Source of the DNA: Phallusia mammillata
Lineage: Eukaryota
Reading direction: 5' to 3'
NCBI GenBank assembly: GCA_965637545.1
Contig: OZ281500.1
Location: 10,850,001 to 10,914,000 of the forward strand
DNA length: 64,000 nucleotides
Shown here: piece after piece, positions 41,801-48,675 of the stretch
Layout: the number at the start of each line of letters is the position of its first letter
Position numbering within the stretch: position 1 is the first letter of the stretch
The notes under the pieces: generated by a model
Database searches by the model: none
What the model was told of the DNA's origin: nothing
Seen by the model: only the letters and a program-made list of their open reading frames with translations
Translations under genes and position numbers: made by a program

Positions 41801-43599
41801 GACTCTTTGCTGTTGAAAGGTTAAAATGGCTGCGGCAATATGAGCGAAGTATCACGTTTTGGACAAGCGCACCCAGAAAGGAGCTTTAAATTTGCTGGAT
41901 AATTTGCACCTGCCCGTGCTGACCCGGCTCATAATGCCCGGGTGTAGAGTCAAGAAATCACATTATCTAATCGCCTATATATCCCTGCCCCCCTTTCTTT
42001 GGCGAATTTGGCGGCGGGTGGTTTATAAAAATTGCTGGTCACTCATATGTCTTGTAGGCTTGCATAGAAAATCTGGTAGCTTTTTGGCAATATTTAAACC
42101 ATCCGTATGTGCTCGTTAGTAGACCATTGAACTCCGTAAACTTTGTTGCACGGCTTAAGGGTTTTAATACAATTACCCGCAGTAGGCGGGCTGTTTGCGC
42201 GCTTAAGCTTACCAAAACAAATAAACGTGAACAGGTTAAAATATGCGATATTCGGTAGGGTTTTTTATCCAGCGTTTCAAAATCCCATGTGATTTTAAAA
42301 CCAAAATATGGGTAACCGGATTAGAAAGTGAAAATCATCCCAACTAAATTCCTACGGGGTAAAATTGCAAGGTGTAACATCTGATTAAATTGCTTAACAT
42401 GCACTCATTCGACTCTGTAATAAACGAAACACCCCTTTATTATGCAGGAAGAAAACTCGTTGATGCTGGAAGACAAGTGCAAATGGGGCGAGAGCTTTGT
42501 CTTCGTCTACGATGTCACCGACAAATACAGCTTTGATGAACTGACCCGACTTAAATTCATTGCCAGTTACACCCATTCACGTCTTCGTGTCAATTTTACT
42601 CCCTGTTGGATTCTCGTTGGTAACAAGTCAGATCTCGCCGAGAATGAGAGAATGGTGAGCACAGAAGAGGGAAGACAACTTGCGAAGGACCTCGGATGTC
42701 ACATGTTTCGCGAAATTTCTGTGCGTGAATCGGTCCATGAATCGGGCGAGGTCTTTGAGGATTTATGGAGGGAATTTTCACGTCTCAGTCCCCGTTCGCC
42801 CTCTAGCAGTCAACGCCGGAAATTCTCGTATCGCATTCAGGATAAGATTCCCGTACTTAACTCAAACGCATCCACTTGCGCTTCTGAAGCACTTAAAAAC
42901 CTTGGAGTGAACGAGGGCATCTCCACGCTTACCCATACACTTAAAAAGCAATGTAGCGCCCCTGGGTTTACATTCTCGACTCGGACATCGAAAGAAAGCC
43001 TCTACAACGATAGCAATAACAACAACCACAGTGATGACATGTATGATAACGCTCGGGATATAGCAAGAATACCTGAGGCAGATGATGAGGACAGTGATCC
43101 CGCTACCCCTCCTCCAGATTACGGAAAACCAATGCGATCCCGAAGGAACGCTGTAGTAAGCGGAAGTCTAACGACCAAACCTCCCACCTTTCCCCGGGCC
43201 CGAAGAAAGGCATTGTGCAAGGCTGTAAGCGTAGACAATGTGTTCAACCATCTTGATGAAAATTCTACAACGGCGAGCGACACCACTACGCCGCTGTCGT
43301 CATCATCGACGTCATCGTCTACTACGTCACTTAATGGAAGCATAAACCCGAGTACGAACTCAAGTGATAAACTAAAAACGAACGATTCGATGAGAGTTCG
43401 TAGTAGCTCGGACGCCGGGCAGAACCAAAGCGACCCAAAGAAAGCTGTCTCTCGAAATCCCGAGGACCTTGTTTCAATATACCAGGACCACTGCCGGCGC
43501 CACAGGGCCCGACGCTGTGAGTCCGTCAAATTCAAACGCCCCTTTAACCCCATGCCTGCAGTACCCTTAACGTCAACGTACGAAGTGGGTGGTTTTTAG
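29895..43599 (+). CDS. RERG: RERG-type Ras-like small GTPase with N- and C-terminal extensions, 479 aa
   Basis: Exons 29895-30051, 40551-40607, 41025-41098, 42448-43599, phases consistent. G1 GVGGVGKT, RFITKRFIGDYDPTLE, G3 DTAGQE, KWGESFVFVYDVT and G4 VGNKSD closely follow RERG. No CAAX. Probable 5'-UTR intron 29448-29743. Confidence 0.9.
33211..34541. promoter_or_regulatory. Candidate enhancer in RERG-like intron 1 (CRE/AP-1 cluster, Pbx-Meis decamer)
   Basis: TGACGTCA at 33211 and 33743, TGACTCA at 33991, TTACGTCA at 34161, CGTCA half-sites near 33229, 33982 and 34069, TGATTGACAG at 34532-34541. Motif matches only. Confidence 0.4.
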
Positions 43600-43921: not shown

Positions 43922-44207
43922 ACCGATTACTTTTAGAATTTCTTGTCATGCACGGACACCAGTAATAGTTCAGAAGTAAATAGTGTATTTGTACGCATAT
44001 ATCTCTTCAAACAACACAGGAAAAACATTGGGAGATAAAAGAATTCAGGGCATCACCAGGTCAACAAGTCTTAGAATAAATATTTCATGTGAACACTAAA
44101 ATCGTTTTTGTTGAGATCACCAAGCATGTATAAGTTGAACACAAAGCAATAAAGAAAAGCAAGGCAAAAATGTGAACAGAAGTGAAAGAGATAGCTTGTG
44201 TGTAACA

Positions 44208-47200
44208 TCACTGAAGACCTGTTAGCATTCCCTTCCAAGCTGGGATGACGAATTGACAAAGCAGTCTTTCGGCTTCGACTGTGTCTGGGCTGCTTTTGCC
44301 TGCCAGCGAACTGACGAGCAGAAGTTGGGGCAAAACGGCGCCAATCAATTTCGCCGCAGACTGCTGTAGCAAGCTTCTGCGTGAATGATAAACAGCATTG
44401 CTGCTAATTACTATTGGCATATTGCCCGGCACAGATGTTATCTGTGCGTCTTCCGTTTGACACCCGACTGCTTTGAAATTTGTGTGAGGGTACAAGGTCT
44501 CATGGTGTGATTTATCTTCGTTCGAACCAAAGGAAAGTTGCACAGCCAAAGAATCCAACTCATTCGCGGCAGCTTTTCGCTTCATGCTGAAATAACCTTG
44601 GTCGCAATGCGACGAGGCGCGTGATTGGTTGGATTGTGGACATTCAGGCGTGACTTGGCGCCGCGATTCGTCTGACTGATATGACGTCACTGATATCTCT
44701 GCCTCCCTTGACTCGTTATCAGATTTGTGGGGACCGTCGACAGCTATTCGTGGCTTATTTTGTTCCGCGCGAAGACGATCCTGAAGGTCAACGATTGTTG
44801 CCTGCAGTTAAAAAACATCCAGTAAATAAATGTTGCGAGGCAATGTTTTTGTTAAATGATATATTGGGTAGTGTTCTGTGCAAAAATATTGCTTCAAAAG
44901 TTAAACTACATCTGTAACCGAATTTTAGGATTCTTACATTTAGATTACCCATATGTTAGTTTAAACGGAAATGTAGATTATTTTTTTACTTTAAATTTGG
45001 CAAAGAATAAAGTTGTACAAACTATGTTTCGTTAATTGCGACAAGGTAACACAACCATCGTTCAAAGAGGAAACACACTAATCAAAGAGGCAAACAGATG
45101 CCTGTCCAGTTATCCTTCAAACCACAATTAGGAAGTGATCTCACCTTGAAGATCCTGCTTTCGTTTTCCGCTTTCGCACGATAAATTTCCGCCTCAACGC
45201 GATAACATTCTTCTTCAATCGCTCCCTCGCGAATCTTCGATGTTTCTGATCTCAGTGAATTTATTTCTGATTCCTAGGAAATTAAATGACAATTTTGGCC
45301 ATTTTACAAAACCTATACCACTTATGATTAGACCTATGAACAGATCCATGTGCAATGTTACACAACCAAATTTATCATTTAAAATATTTCAAAATATTTA
45401 AATTTTGGACTGGTTTGTTAAAAAGTGAAATTCTAAATCGACCATGCAACTAACATTCATTCTAGTTGTGCTATGAAAAGTATCTGTACCTGGAGTTTGA
45501 TGATACTTTTTGCTTCATCCAGCTCATCGGCCATTTCTTGTAAAACTCCATCACGTTGACCAAATTGTAAAAACCTAGAATCATACGTTTTAATACATTA
45601 ACCCGCTAAACTTTGTTTTAGAAGATCTAGTATCCAGTTTTAAATACAAACAAATTGGCTTCTATAATATGTACCTTTCCGATGAGCAATGACCTTTCTT
45701 GCTTTCCCATTCCCGCTTGTGCTGCTTCCTCCTGGTTTCAATCAGACGCAGGAAAAATGATCGATTTCGCAGCCAGTTCTGCGCTGAATTGGACGATGGC
45801 GACGGGAGATTATGCCCAGGTGATGCAAGGCACTTCTTCTTTATCCTATGCAATACATTAATCATCCACATTAGACCGGCTATTAATACAATATTTTGAA
45901 AATAAAGTATTGTATGAGTGTTGAGGAAATAACTTACTTTTCTCCGAGAAGATCAGGTACGCTATTGGTATCAAGTCCCGTCGAGAAGTCGCCTGAAGCA
46001 ATGCTACAAGTAGATGTATGTGCAGAGTTGCCGCCGATGCCATCCATTCTGTCTTCGCTAAATGTCATAAAATGATGCTGGCAACATTCTTGTGAGACCA
46101 CGGAAGAAGATGAGAGCGGAAGTTGAAAGGCAGCAGGTGCCATGACCGTTTCCGATATCTCGGGGTGAAGAAATCTCGATTCATTGCAATCGACAGATTT
46201 CAAATCACTGTCTCGCGCTTCTGCGGGTTTTGCCCAAATGGCCTCGAAGTCGTTGTCATCACTTGAAGACATTGCTGGCGAACGGATTTGCCCAGCGCAC
46301 AAGATGTTGCAGTCGGAGCTTCCGTCTGGTCGTGTACGAATCGGTGTAGTTGGAAATATCGGACCAACGACAAGGTTGTCTTCTTCTCTTAGCGCAAGCG
46401 AAATAGGCATGTCATCTCTTGAGAGTGGCTTGCATTTAGAGTTGTTATTTTTGTCGCAAATGTTGTCGGGTGATAAAGGTTCACTGTCACACAGGCGCCG
46501 ACACGATGATGAACACTGTCCAGACTTGCGGGATGACACGCGTGGCTTGGAATTGAAACCTGTTTTGTATCTTGCAACTGATACATCGCAGTTGTCTGTC
46601 AAACCAATGTCAACTGTTTTATTGACATCTGATTTCCCGGCTGTCAAAGTTTTTCTAGTCTTGTTCTGTCGGTGTCTGGGAGTAGTTGCAGCTCCACAGT
46701 GCCCTCTCGTGGAAGAGTTTCTCGAGCTGCTCACTGGTGAAGCCCCCGAATAACAGATGGATGAAACACTTGTGGATGGCGAATCTAAAGAATTCGTCCT
46801 GGAGTGCGTTTTCTTGTATGGAGGTCCCATCAGATCGCATCGATGCCTCCGTGGACCAGACGATGACGTTGATGTTGACATTGAATTGGTAAAAGACGTG
46901 GAAGATGCACTGGACACTGAAGTATCTCGATTGGATTTTCGTGTGGACTGAGTTCGTTTTCTCCCTCTTCTAACCGAGGTGTTCTTTGGGCGCTCGGCTT
47001 GACCACAGGTTTTTTGTGTATTGTTTCTTGTGACCTTTTCCGTTGCTAAAGATGTCACTTTATTTTTAGTAAGTTCTTCAAAATTTAGTGCAACTTCGGT
47101 TTGCCTAGTTGTCAATGGGAGTGGAGAACCTGGAGATTCGAAACTCGGTGTCGACGGCACGGAGGCAATCGCCTTAATTCGTTTTGGAATACGCTTCGTA

Positions 47201-47763
47201 GAACTTCTGGTTGGCAACGTGTGAAAACGTTTTTTCGAACTTTTGCAACCATCGTCAGACACAATCGGTGATATAGGTGCTGAACTTCTAAATCCGAAAC
47301 GATTGGTACATTTTGGTTGTGGAGTTGTTACTTTACTACTAGTTTTACTTCTAGCATCTTCGCTGTCTGAGTTAGGTTTGGAACATCCGGCCCGTGGTGA
47401 TTCGATGGATGTAACCGATGGACGTCGTGCACATGAATCCACACTCACAGTGCTAGGCGTGTTGGGAACGCTTTTGGTCGTTTTAGTCATCTGCCTTTCC
47501 GATGCAGATTTAAAGCTGTTAAAGATTTGGTCGAGGTTGGTGGCGGAAGGTCGTGGTAATCGTTTCCACTTGCGTTTTTCAGTGCTGTTATTACTTTGTA
47601 AATCCCCCGCTGACACAACACTTGACTTTTCTCGTCCACCACGCCGTAAGGGCAAATGTAGTGGTGACTTGAACGCCAGTTTCTTGCTTGCCTTGTGTCG
47701 CGACGCACTCGTTTTTGTTTCTGCTTGGAATTCATTTGATTGCACTTGTAGTGATTTTTTCAT
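44208..47763 (-). CDS. SYBU: Syntabulin/syntaphilin-like protein, ~877 aa (long S/T/R/P-rich N-terminus, coiled coil, LC8-type motif, C-terminal hydrophobic segment)
   Basis: Exons 47763-45938, 45574-45490, 45273-45145, 44801-44208, phases consistent. Spliced ESEINSLRSETSKIREGAIEEECYRVEAEIYRAKAENESRIFKATIVDLQDRL aligns with the remembered SYBU/SNPH core ESEIVELKSQLARMREDWIEEECHRVEAQLALKEARKEIKQLKQVIETMRSSL. Gene model is solid; the orthology call is from memory. Confidence 0.75.
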
Positions 47764-48675
47764 CGTTGGTCTTTTTCAAGGGAACGAACTCAGGATAACA
47801 AAGGCTCGAACCAAGGGATAAACAGAGATGTCACAGTGAAAAACAGAAGAGAAATAAATTTTACTGTTACATGTATTTACATAAACTATAAGAGGCGTCG
47901 GCCTGCCCTGCACCAGAAAAAAACAAAACAATAAACAACTTTAACATTTTTAACATATATTTCGCGAGCGACATATTTAAAAAAAAGTCTGGTCTAAAAA
48001 AATAATACTTTGCAGAAAATATCAATATCCATGAGTACCTGTAAAAGCTACCGCTCTGTGTGGGTAGTTTTGGAAAATATATCAGAAACTATTGATGTGC
48101 ATAAAACAAGTGCCAACCCAGTGCGACACTGCCATGGCTGTGATACAAAACATATTGATCACTCAGAACCTAACTTGAAGCTTTAAGTGCTGCTCCAATC
48201 GATATGAGCATCAGGGAAATAACCTCGAATGTGTTTTGAAGCTATCTTCTACAAGACTGTTTTTGTGCTAAGGTTAGTAGCACCACTAACAAATCATGTA
48301 ACCCCACTGTCAACAGTTGTCAGCGGTTCAAGCGGTTACAACTGACGTCGACAATACGATAAAAGGCAAAAACGCCTTGTCTTTCACATAACGATATGAC
48401 TGCCAGCTGTAAAACGTCCCATGATAATTATAACAAATTTTAATTCTGTTTAGTATAACGGTGCTTTTGCTACCACTAATTTCACTATCAACAACACTCA
48501 TCACCCTTATATGCCTGATCCTACTAAAGCCACAGCACAAGGACTGTTCGTTGACAACTGCATTACATTATGCCACACTTCTGGTTGCAACCAGTTTTAT
48601 AAGAGGTCCTTTCGCCAGGCTAGACAACCCTGTTAAACTCACACGATTACTCCGCGGGGTGCTCACACTTCTGAC

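What the first reader, a model, noticed from the sequence alone, without database searches (positions are those of the whole stretch)
44208..47763. Syntabulin/syntaphilin-like gene in an apparently non-vertebrate chordate
Seen only after splicing three exons missed or split by the ORF track: the coiled coil with IEEECYRVEAE, preceded by QRDGVLQEMADELDEAKSIIKLQESEI. Known: SNPH docks axonal mitochondria and SYBU is a kinesin-1 adaptor; both share IEEECHRVEAQ and are generally discussed as vertebrate proteins without clear fly or worm counterparts. Inference: a single pro-ortholog predating the SYBU/SNPH split, with a much longer (~600 aa) basic Ser/Thr/Pro-rich N-terminus that may bind microtubules. 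It could reveal the ancestral mitochondrial anchoring/transport function.
Basis: partly seen in the sequence, partly recalled or inferred. Interest (0 to 1): 0.7.

Follow-up and report, generated by a model that had tools for sequence, protein, structure and literature searches.

The report
Sea-squirt syntaphilin/syntabulin-family gene
This is a real, expressed gene of the sea squirt Phallusia mammillata whose protein is a very divergent relative of the vertebrate organelle-to-microtubule linkers syntaphilin and syntabulin; databases already flag it automatically, but I found no paper that discusses it.

Summary
On the minus strand at 44208-47763 there is a gene with canonical GT-AG introns. 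It encodes QRDGVLQEMADELDEAKSIIKLQ|ESEI... and IEEECYRVEAE.

Corrections and additions:
The true product is 934 aa over five coding exons. It is identical to a UniRef entry from Phallusia mammillata named 'Uncharacterized protein LOC100177054'.
- Spliced contigs from four studies show only the five-exon form. One contig carries a sequence I recognise from memory as a spliced-leader tag at the 5' end.
- Pfam Syntaphilin (PF15290) is the only family hit. It scores 28.5-29.8 bits against a cut-off of 25 and covers only the central coiled coil.
- The nearest clusters by protein-language-model features in the ESM Atlas are syntaphilin/syntabulin clusters.
- The predicted architecture fits the family: a basic Ser/Thr-rich disordered N-terminus, an 86-residue helix, and C-terminal hydrophobic helices.
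- Relatives turned up in another ascidian (Clavelina), in appendicularians (Oikopleura), and in an unidentified plankton clade.
- A direct phmmer search reached no vertebrate protein at E<=0.001, so the link rests on the profile.
- I could not fetch vertebrate sequences, so the 'single pro-ortholog' claim has no tree behind it.

Verdict: a new (tunicate) member of a known family, already detected by automatic annotation. Moderate interest.

The parts
43966..47909 (-). Whole mature mRNA footprint: five exons, about 3.2 kb after splicing
   Evidence: Single spliced contigs of 3088-3203 nt from four runs in four studies lie on 43966/43981/44048..47885/47909, with four joints.
47908..47910 (-). 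CAG 3' splice acceptor, probably used for spliced-leader trans-splicing. It is preceded by a pyrimidine tract.
   Evidence: The contig of run X4 continues beyond 47909 with 23 letters that do not match the genome (table 7). On the mRNA strand they read ...ATTCTATTTGAATA, followed by the genomic AG. The genome shows tgttttgtttttttctggtgcag|G at this place. Identifying this as the ascidian spliced leader rests on my own knowledge, not on a tool result.
47764..47907 (-). 5' untranslated region
   Evidence: Covered by the spliced contigs upstream of the ATG. The ATG at 47763 is the first start codon after an in-frame stop and is also the start of P0001.
45938..47763 (-). Coding exon 1 (residues 1-608 plus 2 nt): a disordered, basic, Ser/Thr/Pro-rich N-terminal region
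   Evidence: ORF. Composition is S 17.6%, T 9.2%, R 8.1%, K 7.4%, P 6.9%, with 94 K+R against 57 D+E. No Pfam hit. The donor is GTAAGT.
47545..47559 (-). LPRPS core (residues 69-73) of the motif K-R-L-P-R-P-S..N-L-D-Q-I-F, which is conserved across tunicates
   Evidence: It is conserved in Clavelina (KLPRPSTANFDQIF). As [KR][KR/N]xLPxPS it occurs 4-5 times in the appendicularian homologues P0008 and P0029.
45675..45845 (-).
   Evidence: It is needed to reproduce P0001 exactly and is present in all four spliced contigs. It is flanked by AG and GT.
45743..45775 (-). W-L-R-N-R-S-F-F-L-R-L (residues 633-643), the core of the conserved W..NR[SA][FY]FLR helix
   Evidence: The motif is conserved in Clavelina, in the appendicularians and in the unidentified clade. 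AlphaFold2 predicts a helix over residues 628-660 with pLDDT 74-88.
45490..45574 (-). Coding exon 3 (residues 666-694): FLQFGQRDGVLQEMADELDEAKSIIKLQ, the start of the coiled coil
45145..45273 (-). Coding exon 4 (residues 695-737): ESEINSLRSETSKIREGAIEEECYRVEAEIYRAKAENESRIFK
   Evidence: This exon alone scores 29 bits, E = 1.1e-6, against PF15290 profile positions 87-124.
45187..45219 (-). IEEECYRVEAE signature (residues 713-723)
   Evidence: E-E, R, E-A-E-I, N and R are invariant across all eight tunicate-type sequences in the alignment.
44208..44801 (-). Coding exon 5 (residues 738-934 plus the stop codon): end of the coiled coil, an acidic disordered linker, and two C-terminal helices
   Evidence: AlphaFold2 predicts disorder over residues 757-876 and helices over 871-903 and 909-933.
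44301..44357 (-). The only hydrophobic segment of the protein, AAKLIGAVLPQLLLVSSLA (residues 886-904): a candidate membrane tail anchor
   Evidence: Kyte-Doolittle 19-residue mean of 1.68, the maximum for the protein. It lies in a predicted helix with pLDDT about 61-64. The equivalent segments are weaker in Clavelina (1.38) and P0013 (1.35), and there is none in appendicularian P0008 (0.6).
43966..44207 (-). 3' untranslated region
   Evidence: The spliced contigs extend to 43966-44048.

Best explanation
The locus is a genuine, transcribed, five-exon gene of the ascidian Phallusia mammillata. It is probably spliced-leader trans-spliced. Its 934-aa product is the tunicate representative of the syntaphilin/syntabulin family, most likely descended from the single gene that duplicated into SNPH and SYBU in vertebrates.

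Shown here:
- the gene structure and its transcription;
- the Pfam membership call;
- the predicted layout: a 608-aa basic disordered N-terminus, a short conserved helix (W..NRSFFLR), an 86-residue coiled-coil-type helix carrying IEEECxRVEAEI, an acidic disordered linker, and two C-terminal helices, the first of them hydrophobic.

Inferred from what is established for SNPH and SYBU:
- the C-terminal helices insert the protein into an organelle membrane (mitochondrial outer membrane or vesicles);
- the coiled coil dimerises and provides the syntaxin/microtubule/kinesin-1 interface;
- the protein therefore links organelles to microtubules or to kinesin-1, with the Ser/Thr-rich N-terminus as a regulatory, possibly microtubule-binding, region.
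For: Gene and transcript:
- Exact identity of the five-exon translation to P0001 from P. mammillata.
- Spliced contigs with all four joints in four studies.
- A leader-like loose end at a canonical acceptor.

Family:
- PF15290 is the only Pfam hit. It scores 28.5 bits for the full protein, 29.8 for the C-terminal part and 29 for exon 4 alone, against a cut-off of 25.
- 8 of 9 tunicate-type homologues hit PF15290 and nothing else, always on profile positions about 61-159.
- Of the 30 nearest ESM Atlas clusters by features, 16 are PF15290 clusters. The best scores are 0.92, 0.90 and 0.90, with 169-176 shared features.

Architecture:
- AlphaFold2 helix over residues 666-751 with pLDDT 95-98, plus C-terminal helices.
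- A single hydrophobic segment near the C-terminus.
- This matches the kinesin-binding / syntaxin-binding coiled coil / C-terminal mitochondrion-binding layout described for syntabulin (PMC4751430) and the C-terminal mitochondria-targeting domain of syntaphilin (PMC3971748).

Single copy:
- Only one protein from Phallusia and one 90%-identity cluster from Clavelina among the hits in 1.84 billion representatives.
Against: - The Pfam score is only 3-5 bits above the cut-off and covers 75 of 305 profile positions, all in a coiled coil, where composition alone gives some similarity.
- phmmer with the C-terminal 280 aa reached no vertebrate SNPH or SYBU at E<=0.001 in the whole library.
- The hydrophobic tail is marginal for a transmembrane helix (1.68). 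It is weaker in Clavelina and missing in appendicularians.
- No vertebrate sequence could be aligned here, so motif identity with SNPH/SYBU and pro-orthology rest on the profile and on recall.
- No functional data exist.
Confidence: 0.72

Rival explanations
1. It is an unrelated tunicate coiled-coil protein, and its match to the Syntaphilin profile is chance or compositional similarity of heptad-rich sequence.
For: The Pfam score is barely above threshold and limited to the coiled coil. No vertebrate hit at E<=0.001 by phmmer. A PDB profile search gives only weak, generic coiled-coil matches. Atlas hits among unnamed clusters are generic coiled-coil proteins at 0.82-0.84.
Against: - PF15290 is the only family found, and 8 of 9 divergent homologues find it independently on the same profile positions.
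- The conserved core (EEC.RVEAEI..N..R) is not a heptad-type low-information pattern, and it is invariant across three very divergent clades.
- 16 of the 30 nearest Atlas clusters are PF15290.
- The overall layout matches SYBU and SNPH.
Confidence: 0.1
2. It is a true family member, but in tunicates it is no longer a membrane-anchored organelle linker. It would act as a soluble scaffold through the W..NRSFFLR helix, the coiled coil and the repeated LPxPS motifs.
For: The appendicularian homologues keep the W-motif, the coiled coil, the LPxPS motifs and the last amphipathic helix, but have no hydrophobic segment at all (best Kyte-Doolittle mean 0.6). The ascidian segment is marginal, contains a proline and is modelled with only moderate confidence.
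Against: Phallusia, Clavelina and P0013 all keep a hydrophobic helix at the same relative position near the C-terminus. Tail-anchored outer-membrane proteins typically have moderately hydrophobic anchors (general knowledge).
Confidence: 0.15

Closest known systems
Syntabulin (SYBU / GOLSYN; zebrafish tokkaebi)
   Same: The tunicate protein falls in the same Pfam family, PF15290. It shares the order of a long N-terminal region, a central coiled coil and a C-terminal hydrophobic or organelle-binding tail. That order is described for syntabulin as kinesin-binding, syntaxin-binding and mitochondrion-binding domains (PMC4751430). The nearest Atlas cluster is 'putative Syntabulin', score 0.92.
   Different: - Only about 75 residues are recognisably alike, and there was no direct phmmer hit at E<=0.001.
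- The N-terminus is far longer (608 aa), basic and has no detectable similarity to the family profile.
- The tunicate-specific W..NRSFFLR helix and LPxPS motif lie outside the part that aligns to the profile.
- Kinesin-1 and syntaxin binding are untested.
Syntaphilin (SNPH)
   Same: Same Pfam family. Syntaphilin and syntaphilin-like Atlas clusters score 0.90. SNPH is targeted to mitochondria by a C-terminal domain and anchors them to microtubules (PMC3971748). The ascidian protein likewise has its only hydrophobic helix near the C-terminus.
   Different: The tunicate protein is about twice as long as the typical SNPH cluster members (410-530 aa). The axon-sorting and LC8-binding regions could not be examined. 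No TQT-type LC8 motif was found in P0001.
TRAK/Milton-Miro adaptors (functional analogue only)
   Same: They are coiled-coil adaptors that couple mitochondria to kinesin-1 (PMC3971748). A HAP1_N/Milton cluster appears among distant Atlas look-alikes at 0.82.
   Different: There is no Pfam HAP1_N or Milton hit. An Atlas score of 0.82 is within the noise range. This is not a family relationship.

Membership tests
Syntaphilin/Syntabulin (Pfam PF15290) | Score above the curated gathering threshold of the family profile, with no better-scoring family | tested here: met
   28.5 bits for P0001, 29.8 for residues 620-934 and 29 for exon 4 alone, against a cut-off of 25. It is the only family reported. 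The margin is small.
Syntaphilin/Syntabulin (Pfam PF15290) | Central coiled coil carrying the IEEEC-x-RVEA signature (the syntaxin-binding region of SYBU) | tested here: met
IEEECYRVEAE sits at residues 713-723, inside an 86-residue helix with pLDDT 95-98. It aligns to profile positions 64-139. It was not checked against a fetched vertebrate sequence.
Syntaphilin/Syntabulin (Pfam PF15290) | C-terminal hydrophobic tail that targets the protein to mitochondria or other membranes | tested here: inconclusive
   Phallusia has one hydrophobic segment at residues 886-904 (Kyte-Doolittle 1.68) followed by a conserved amphipathic helix. The segment is weaker in Clavelina and P0013 and absent in appendicularians. 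Targeting itself cannot be tested with these tools.
Syntaphilin/Syntabulin (Pfam PF15290) | Direct (reciprocal) sequence match to vertebrate SNPH or SYBU | tested here: not met
   phmmer of residues 655-934 against 1.84 billion representatives gave 10 hits at E<=0.001. The two I could name (Clavelina directly, Oikopleura through P0008's relatives) are tunicates. The others are unnamed plankton or assembly sequences, two of which look like chance matches. I did not recognise a vertebrate SNPH or SYBU among them. The word-index search also found only the query itself. The link is visible only through the profile and Atlas features, which fits the fast evolution of tunicate proteins but leaves this criterion unmet.
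Syntaphilin/Syntabulin (Pfam PF15290) | Binding of the kinesin-1 heavy chain (KIF5), microtubules and syntaxin-1 | not testable with these tools
   These are biochemical properties. No motif-level proxy is available.
Pro-ortholog of SNPH+SYBU (one tunicate gene to two vertebrate ohnologs) | Single copy in tunicates, and sister position to the vertebrate SNPH+SYBU clade in a gene tree | tested here: inconclusive
   Only one Phallusia protein and one Clavelina cluster (two isoform-like members) appeared among the hits. No vertebrate sequences could be fetched, so no tree with vertebrates was built. The tree of tunicate-type cores shows three long-branched clades.

The most novel reading that the evidence does not exclude
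The tunicate gene keeps the ancestral, pre-neuronal job that zebrafish maternal syntabulin (tokkaebi) still shows: a cargo linker on cortical parallel microtubule arrays of the fertilised egg. In ascidians it would tether the mitochondria-rich myoplasm and/or posterior determinants to the posterior-vegetal microtubule array during the second phase of ooplasmic segregation. The neuronal docking and transport roles of SNPH and SYBU would then be later specialisations. The W..NRSFFLR helix and the repeated LPxPS motifs would be the unrecognised cargo or motor interfaces.

The evidence does not exclude this. The mRNA is present in RNA-type assemblies from at least four studies of this species, and comparable egg microtubule arrays are described for ascidians (PMC13598100). 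However, the stage and tissue of those runs are not known to me.
Probability: 0.12. Interest if true: 0.7.

Novelty: new member of a known kind. Interest (0 to 1): 0.38.

Why it matters
Syntaphilin and syntabulin are central to how vertebrate neurons park and move mitochondria and presynaptic cargo, and syntabulin is also needed for dorsal determination in fish eggs. They are usually treated as having no invertebrate counterpart, and insects lack them (PMC2374702).

A single, expressed tunicate gene offers a system without the SNPH/SYBU paralogue pair for asking what the ancestral protein did. Ascidian embryos are transparent and easy to inject, and they contain both simple neurons and a mitochondria-rich myoplasm that moves on microtubules.

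The comparison among tunicates also points to conserved pieces that are not part of the current family definition: the W..NRSFFLR helix, the LPxPS motif and the terminal amphipathic helix.

The limits are that the gene is already in public databases with an automatic PF15290 label, that the sequence link to vertebrates is thin, and that nothing functional is known.

Tried and rejected
- Word-index homologue searches with exon 1 and with residues 655-934 found only the protein itself. The second even missed Clavelina P0002, so a blank from that tool means little.
- My third and last word-index search used an alignment whose first row was the full-length appendicularian protein P0008. The profile and words were swamped by P0008's close relatives. 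It returned 109 appendicularian-type hits and identified Oikopleura dioica, but no ascidian or vertebrate sequence. In hindsight a single-protein search restricted to the core, with a high E-value limit, would have been better. As a result I obtained no vertebrate SNPH or SYBU sequence, so there is no direct alignment, reciprocal BLAST or tree with vertebrates.
- A PDB sequence search with the core profile gave only insignificant coiled-coil hits.
- An Atlas search restricted to unnamed clusters gave only generic coiled-coil proteins below 0.85.
- The Atlas search for the unidentified-clade protein P0013 failed twice because the machine was busy.
- The organisms behind SRR32119821 (P0013) and the Tara and BILL18 scaffolds (P0003, P0004) could not be determined. 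A paper search for the accessions found nothing.
- Kang et al. 2008 (SNPH domain map) is not held.
- I looked for SxIP, LC8 (TQT) and W-acidic kinesin-light-chain motifs. Nothing convincing or conserved turned up, apart from a conserved REWE inside the exon-2 helix.
- I considered that the 877-aa exon-skipped form is a real isoform. No contig supports it, though contigs cannot exclude a minor isoform.
Full report
**1. What is in the sequence**

The window has no N runs. On the minus strand, QRDGVLQEMADELDEAKSIIKLQ begins at 45558 and IEEECYRVEAE at 45219.

The pieces are 47763-45938, 45574-45490, 45273-45145 and 44801-44208. Every junction is GT..AG, the frame is open, and the product is 877 aa. 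The finding's coordinates are exactly the ATG and the stop codon.

**2. Organism and the true gene model**

A word-index search with exon 1 returned a single protein at 100% identity over 100% of the query. It is P0001, 934 aa, 'Uncharacterized protein LOC100177054', Phallusia mammillata, and it already carries a precomputed PF15290 label.

These are encoded by a 171-nt exon at 45675-45845 with AG and GT flanks. The five-exon translation equals P0001 letter for letter.

**3. Transcription**

Twenty public runs of this species, from six studies, hold the stretch. In fourteen of them about 0.77 of the sampled words are present, which fits an exon-only copy.

I laid four runs from four studies on the region. 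Each gave one contig of 3.1-3.2 kb lying on 43966/43981/44048..47885/47909. The joints were 44800|45144, 45272|45489, 45572|45673 and 45844|45937, which are the four predicted introns, with the 171-nt exon always included. Spliced copies of this kind can only come from RNA. No exon-skipped contig was seen.

In run X4 the contig continues past 47909 with 23 letters that do not match the genome. On the mRNA strand these read ...GGGATTCTATTTGAATA, followed by the genomic AG. The genome there is a pyrimidine tract plus CAG. From my own knowledge, ATTCTATTTGAATAAG is the ascidian spliced leader, so the mRNA appears to be trans-spliced at 47908/47907. This identification is from recall, not a tool result.

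The contig of run X17 differs from the window at six positions, four of them non-synonymous. This looks like ordinary polymorphism.

**4. Family assignment**

- **Pfam.** Syntaphilin (PF15290) is the only hit. It scores 28.5 bits for P0001 (residues 672-746 on profile positions 64-138 of 305), 29.8 bits for residues 620-934 and 29 bits for the 43-aa exon 4 alone. The curated cut-off is 25. Exon 1 and exon 5 on their own hit nothing.
- **ESM Atlas.** For residues 655-934, 16 of the 30 nearest clusters by features are PF15290 clusters. They are named putative Syntabulin (0.92), Syntaphilin (0.90) and Syntaphilin-like (0.90), share 169-176 features and are predominantly chordate.
- **Exhaustive phmmer.** Residues 655-934 against 1.84 billion representatives gave only ten hits at E<=0.001. 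They included the query itself and Clavelina lepadiformis P0002 (952 aa, 104 bits, alignable over the whole 280 residues). There were seven unnamed sequences from plankton or other assemblies (P0003-P0009) and one named only 'hypothetical protein' (P0010). P0006 and P0010 look like chance matches. I did not recognise a vertebrate SNPH or SYBU among them.

The relation to vertebrates is therefore detectable through the curated profile and learned features, but not by pairwise-type search. That fits the known fast evolution of tunicate proteins, but it means the membership call rests on a thin margin. Counting the other way, 8 of 9 tunicate-type homologues independently hit PF15290 and nothing else.

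**5. Relatives and conserved pieces**

The profile search showed that P0008 and P0005 belong to a group that includes Oikopleura dioica proteins (P0029 and P0030, about 40% identical to P0008). The 5' end of the P0008 transcript contig reads CCGATTTCGATTGTCTAACAG directly before the ATG. I recognise this, from memory, as the end of the Oikopleura spliced leader.

A tree of the core region gives three long-branched clades:
- ascidians (Phallusia and Clavelina; support 99/98);
- appendicularians (99/97, with O. dioica nested inside);
- a third, unidentified clade (P0013, P0009, P0003, P0004; support 84/84).

The third clade comes from a Tara Oceans metagenome scaffold, a 'BILL18' metagenome, a Tara metatranscriptome catalogue and run SRR32119821. 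I could not name these organisms.

Alignments show what is conserved:
It is one of the two best-conserved blocks between the two ascidians.
- (b) The coiled coil DELDEA...I....EI..L......I-E-E-E-C-x-R-V-E-A-E-I....N-E-x-R, with 12-13 invariant positions.
- (c) A C-D-x-G-Y-F-S-M island shared by the two ascidians.
- (d) A terminal amphipathic segment (VIPAWKGM in Phallusia, FIYRWCQALM in appendicularians).
- (e) In the N-terminus, a [KR][KR/N]xLPxPS...D-L-L/D-Q-I-F motif. It is present once in ascidians and 4-5 times in appendicularians. Two more ascidian islands are NRFGF..SAP and HTSTCS.AS.

**6. Architecture and likely mechanism**

- **N-terminus.** Residues 1-608 are Ser/Thr/Arg/Lys/Pro-rich with net charge +37.
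- **Predicted structure.** AlphaFold2 on residues 620-934, using the nine-row alignment, predicts a helix at 628-660 (pLDDT 74-88) and one continuous helix at 666-751 (pLDDT 95-98). It predicts disorder over 757-876 and helices at 871-903 and 909-933 (pLDDT about 61-69).
- **Hydrophobic segment.** The only one in the protein is 886-904 (Kyte-Doolittle 1.68). Clavelina and P0013 have weaker equivalents, and appendicularians have none.
- **Comparison with the vertebrate proteins.** Syntabulin is described as having a kinesin-binding domain, a central syntaxin-binding domain and a C-terminal mitochondrion-binding domain (PMC4751430). Syntaphilin reaches mitochondria through a C-terminal targeting domain and anchors them to microtubules (PMC3971748).

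By analogy, I infer a dimeric, tail-anchored linker between an organelle membrane and microtubules or kinesin-1. Its long phosphorylatable N-terminus would be regulatory or microtubule-binding. Only the layout is shown here. All binding activities are inference.

**7. Rivals**

- **Chance coiled-coil similarity.** This is made unlikely by the exclusivity and repeatability of the PF15290 hit, by the non-heptad invariant core, and by the Atlas result. The small score margin and the lack of a direct vertebrate hit keep it alive at about 0.1.
- **True family member that has lost membrane anchoring.** This is suggested mainly by the appendicularians (about 0.15 for Phallusia).

**8. Novelty**

The held literature reports syntabulin and syntaphilin as undetectable in insects (PMC2374702). 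No held paper contains both 'syntaphilin' and 'tunicate'. The few papers containing 'syntabulin' and 'ascidian' came up for other topics, and the one I opened does not describe a tunicate orthologue. No paper cites LOC100177054.

On the other hand, the protein is in UniRef and nr and already carries the PF15290 label. So this is a tunicate member of a known family, known to databases but not studied.

An attractive but unsupported idea is a maternal role like that of zebrafish syntabulin on egg cortical microtubule arrays, which ascidian eggs also have (PMC13598100).

**9. Limits**

I obtained no vertebrate sequences, so there is no reciprocal BLAST, no SNPH/SYBU tree and no intron comparison. 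The third clade is unidentified, so I cannot say whether the family predates tunicates plus vertebrates. The sequencing runs are coded, so stage and tissue of expression are unknown.

Noticed in passing
window 47885-47930 (minus strand): The mRNA 5' end in run X4 carries non-genomic letters. On the mRNA strand they read ...ATTCTATTTGAATA, and they join at a pyrimidine-tract/CAG acceptor. This looks like ascidian spliced-leader trans-splicing of this gene. The leader identity comes from my memory. The preceding GAGTACGGG looks like a template-switch oligo remnant.
   Followed up: partly
It lies outside the part that aligns to the Pfam Syntaphilin profile.
   Followed up: partly
window 47545-47559 (minus strand); P0008 residues 20-200; P0029 residues 18-190: A short motif, [KR][KR/N]xLPxPS, followed some residues later by D-L-L or D-Q-I-F. 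It occurs once in the ascidian proteins and 4-5 times in tandem-like spacing in the appendicularian homologues. Its function is unknown, and it matches none of the motifs I checked (SxIP, TQT, W-acidic).
   Followed up: partly
L001 (SRR32119821 contig), L003 (Tara metagenome scaffold), L004 (BILL18 metagenome scaffold): A third clade of Syntaphilin-profile-positive homologues comes from unidentified planktonic eukaryotes (P0013, 937 aa and Asn/Gln-rich, plus P0009, P0003 and P0004). If these are not tunicates, the family is older than assumed.
   Followed up: partly
L002 1-21: The appendicularian homologue's transcript contig starts with CCGATTTCGATTGTCTAACAG immediately before the ATG. I recognise this from memory as the 3' part of the Oikopleura spliced leader. 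It supports the appendicularian origin of P0008.
   Followed up: no
window 42442-43599 (plus strand): A convergent neighbour. A large ORF/exon encodes the C-terminal two thirds of a Ras-family GTPase domain (PF00071, 46.5 bits) followed by a long Ser/Thr-rich tail. Its stop lies about 370 nt from the 3' end of the syntaphilin-like mRNA.
   Followed up: partly
window 45242, 45782, 46070, 46308, 46407, 47407: The contig of run X17 differs from the window at six coding positions. Four are non-synonymous: T705I, F565C, N486H and P453S. T705I lies in the coiled coil but not at a conserved column. This is probably population polymorphism.
   Followed up: partly
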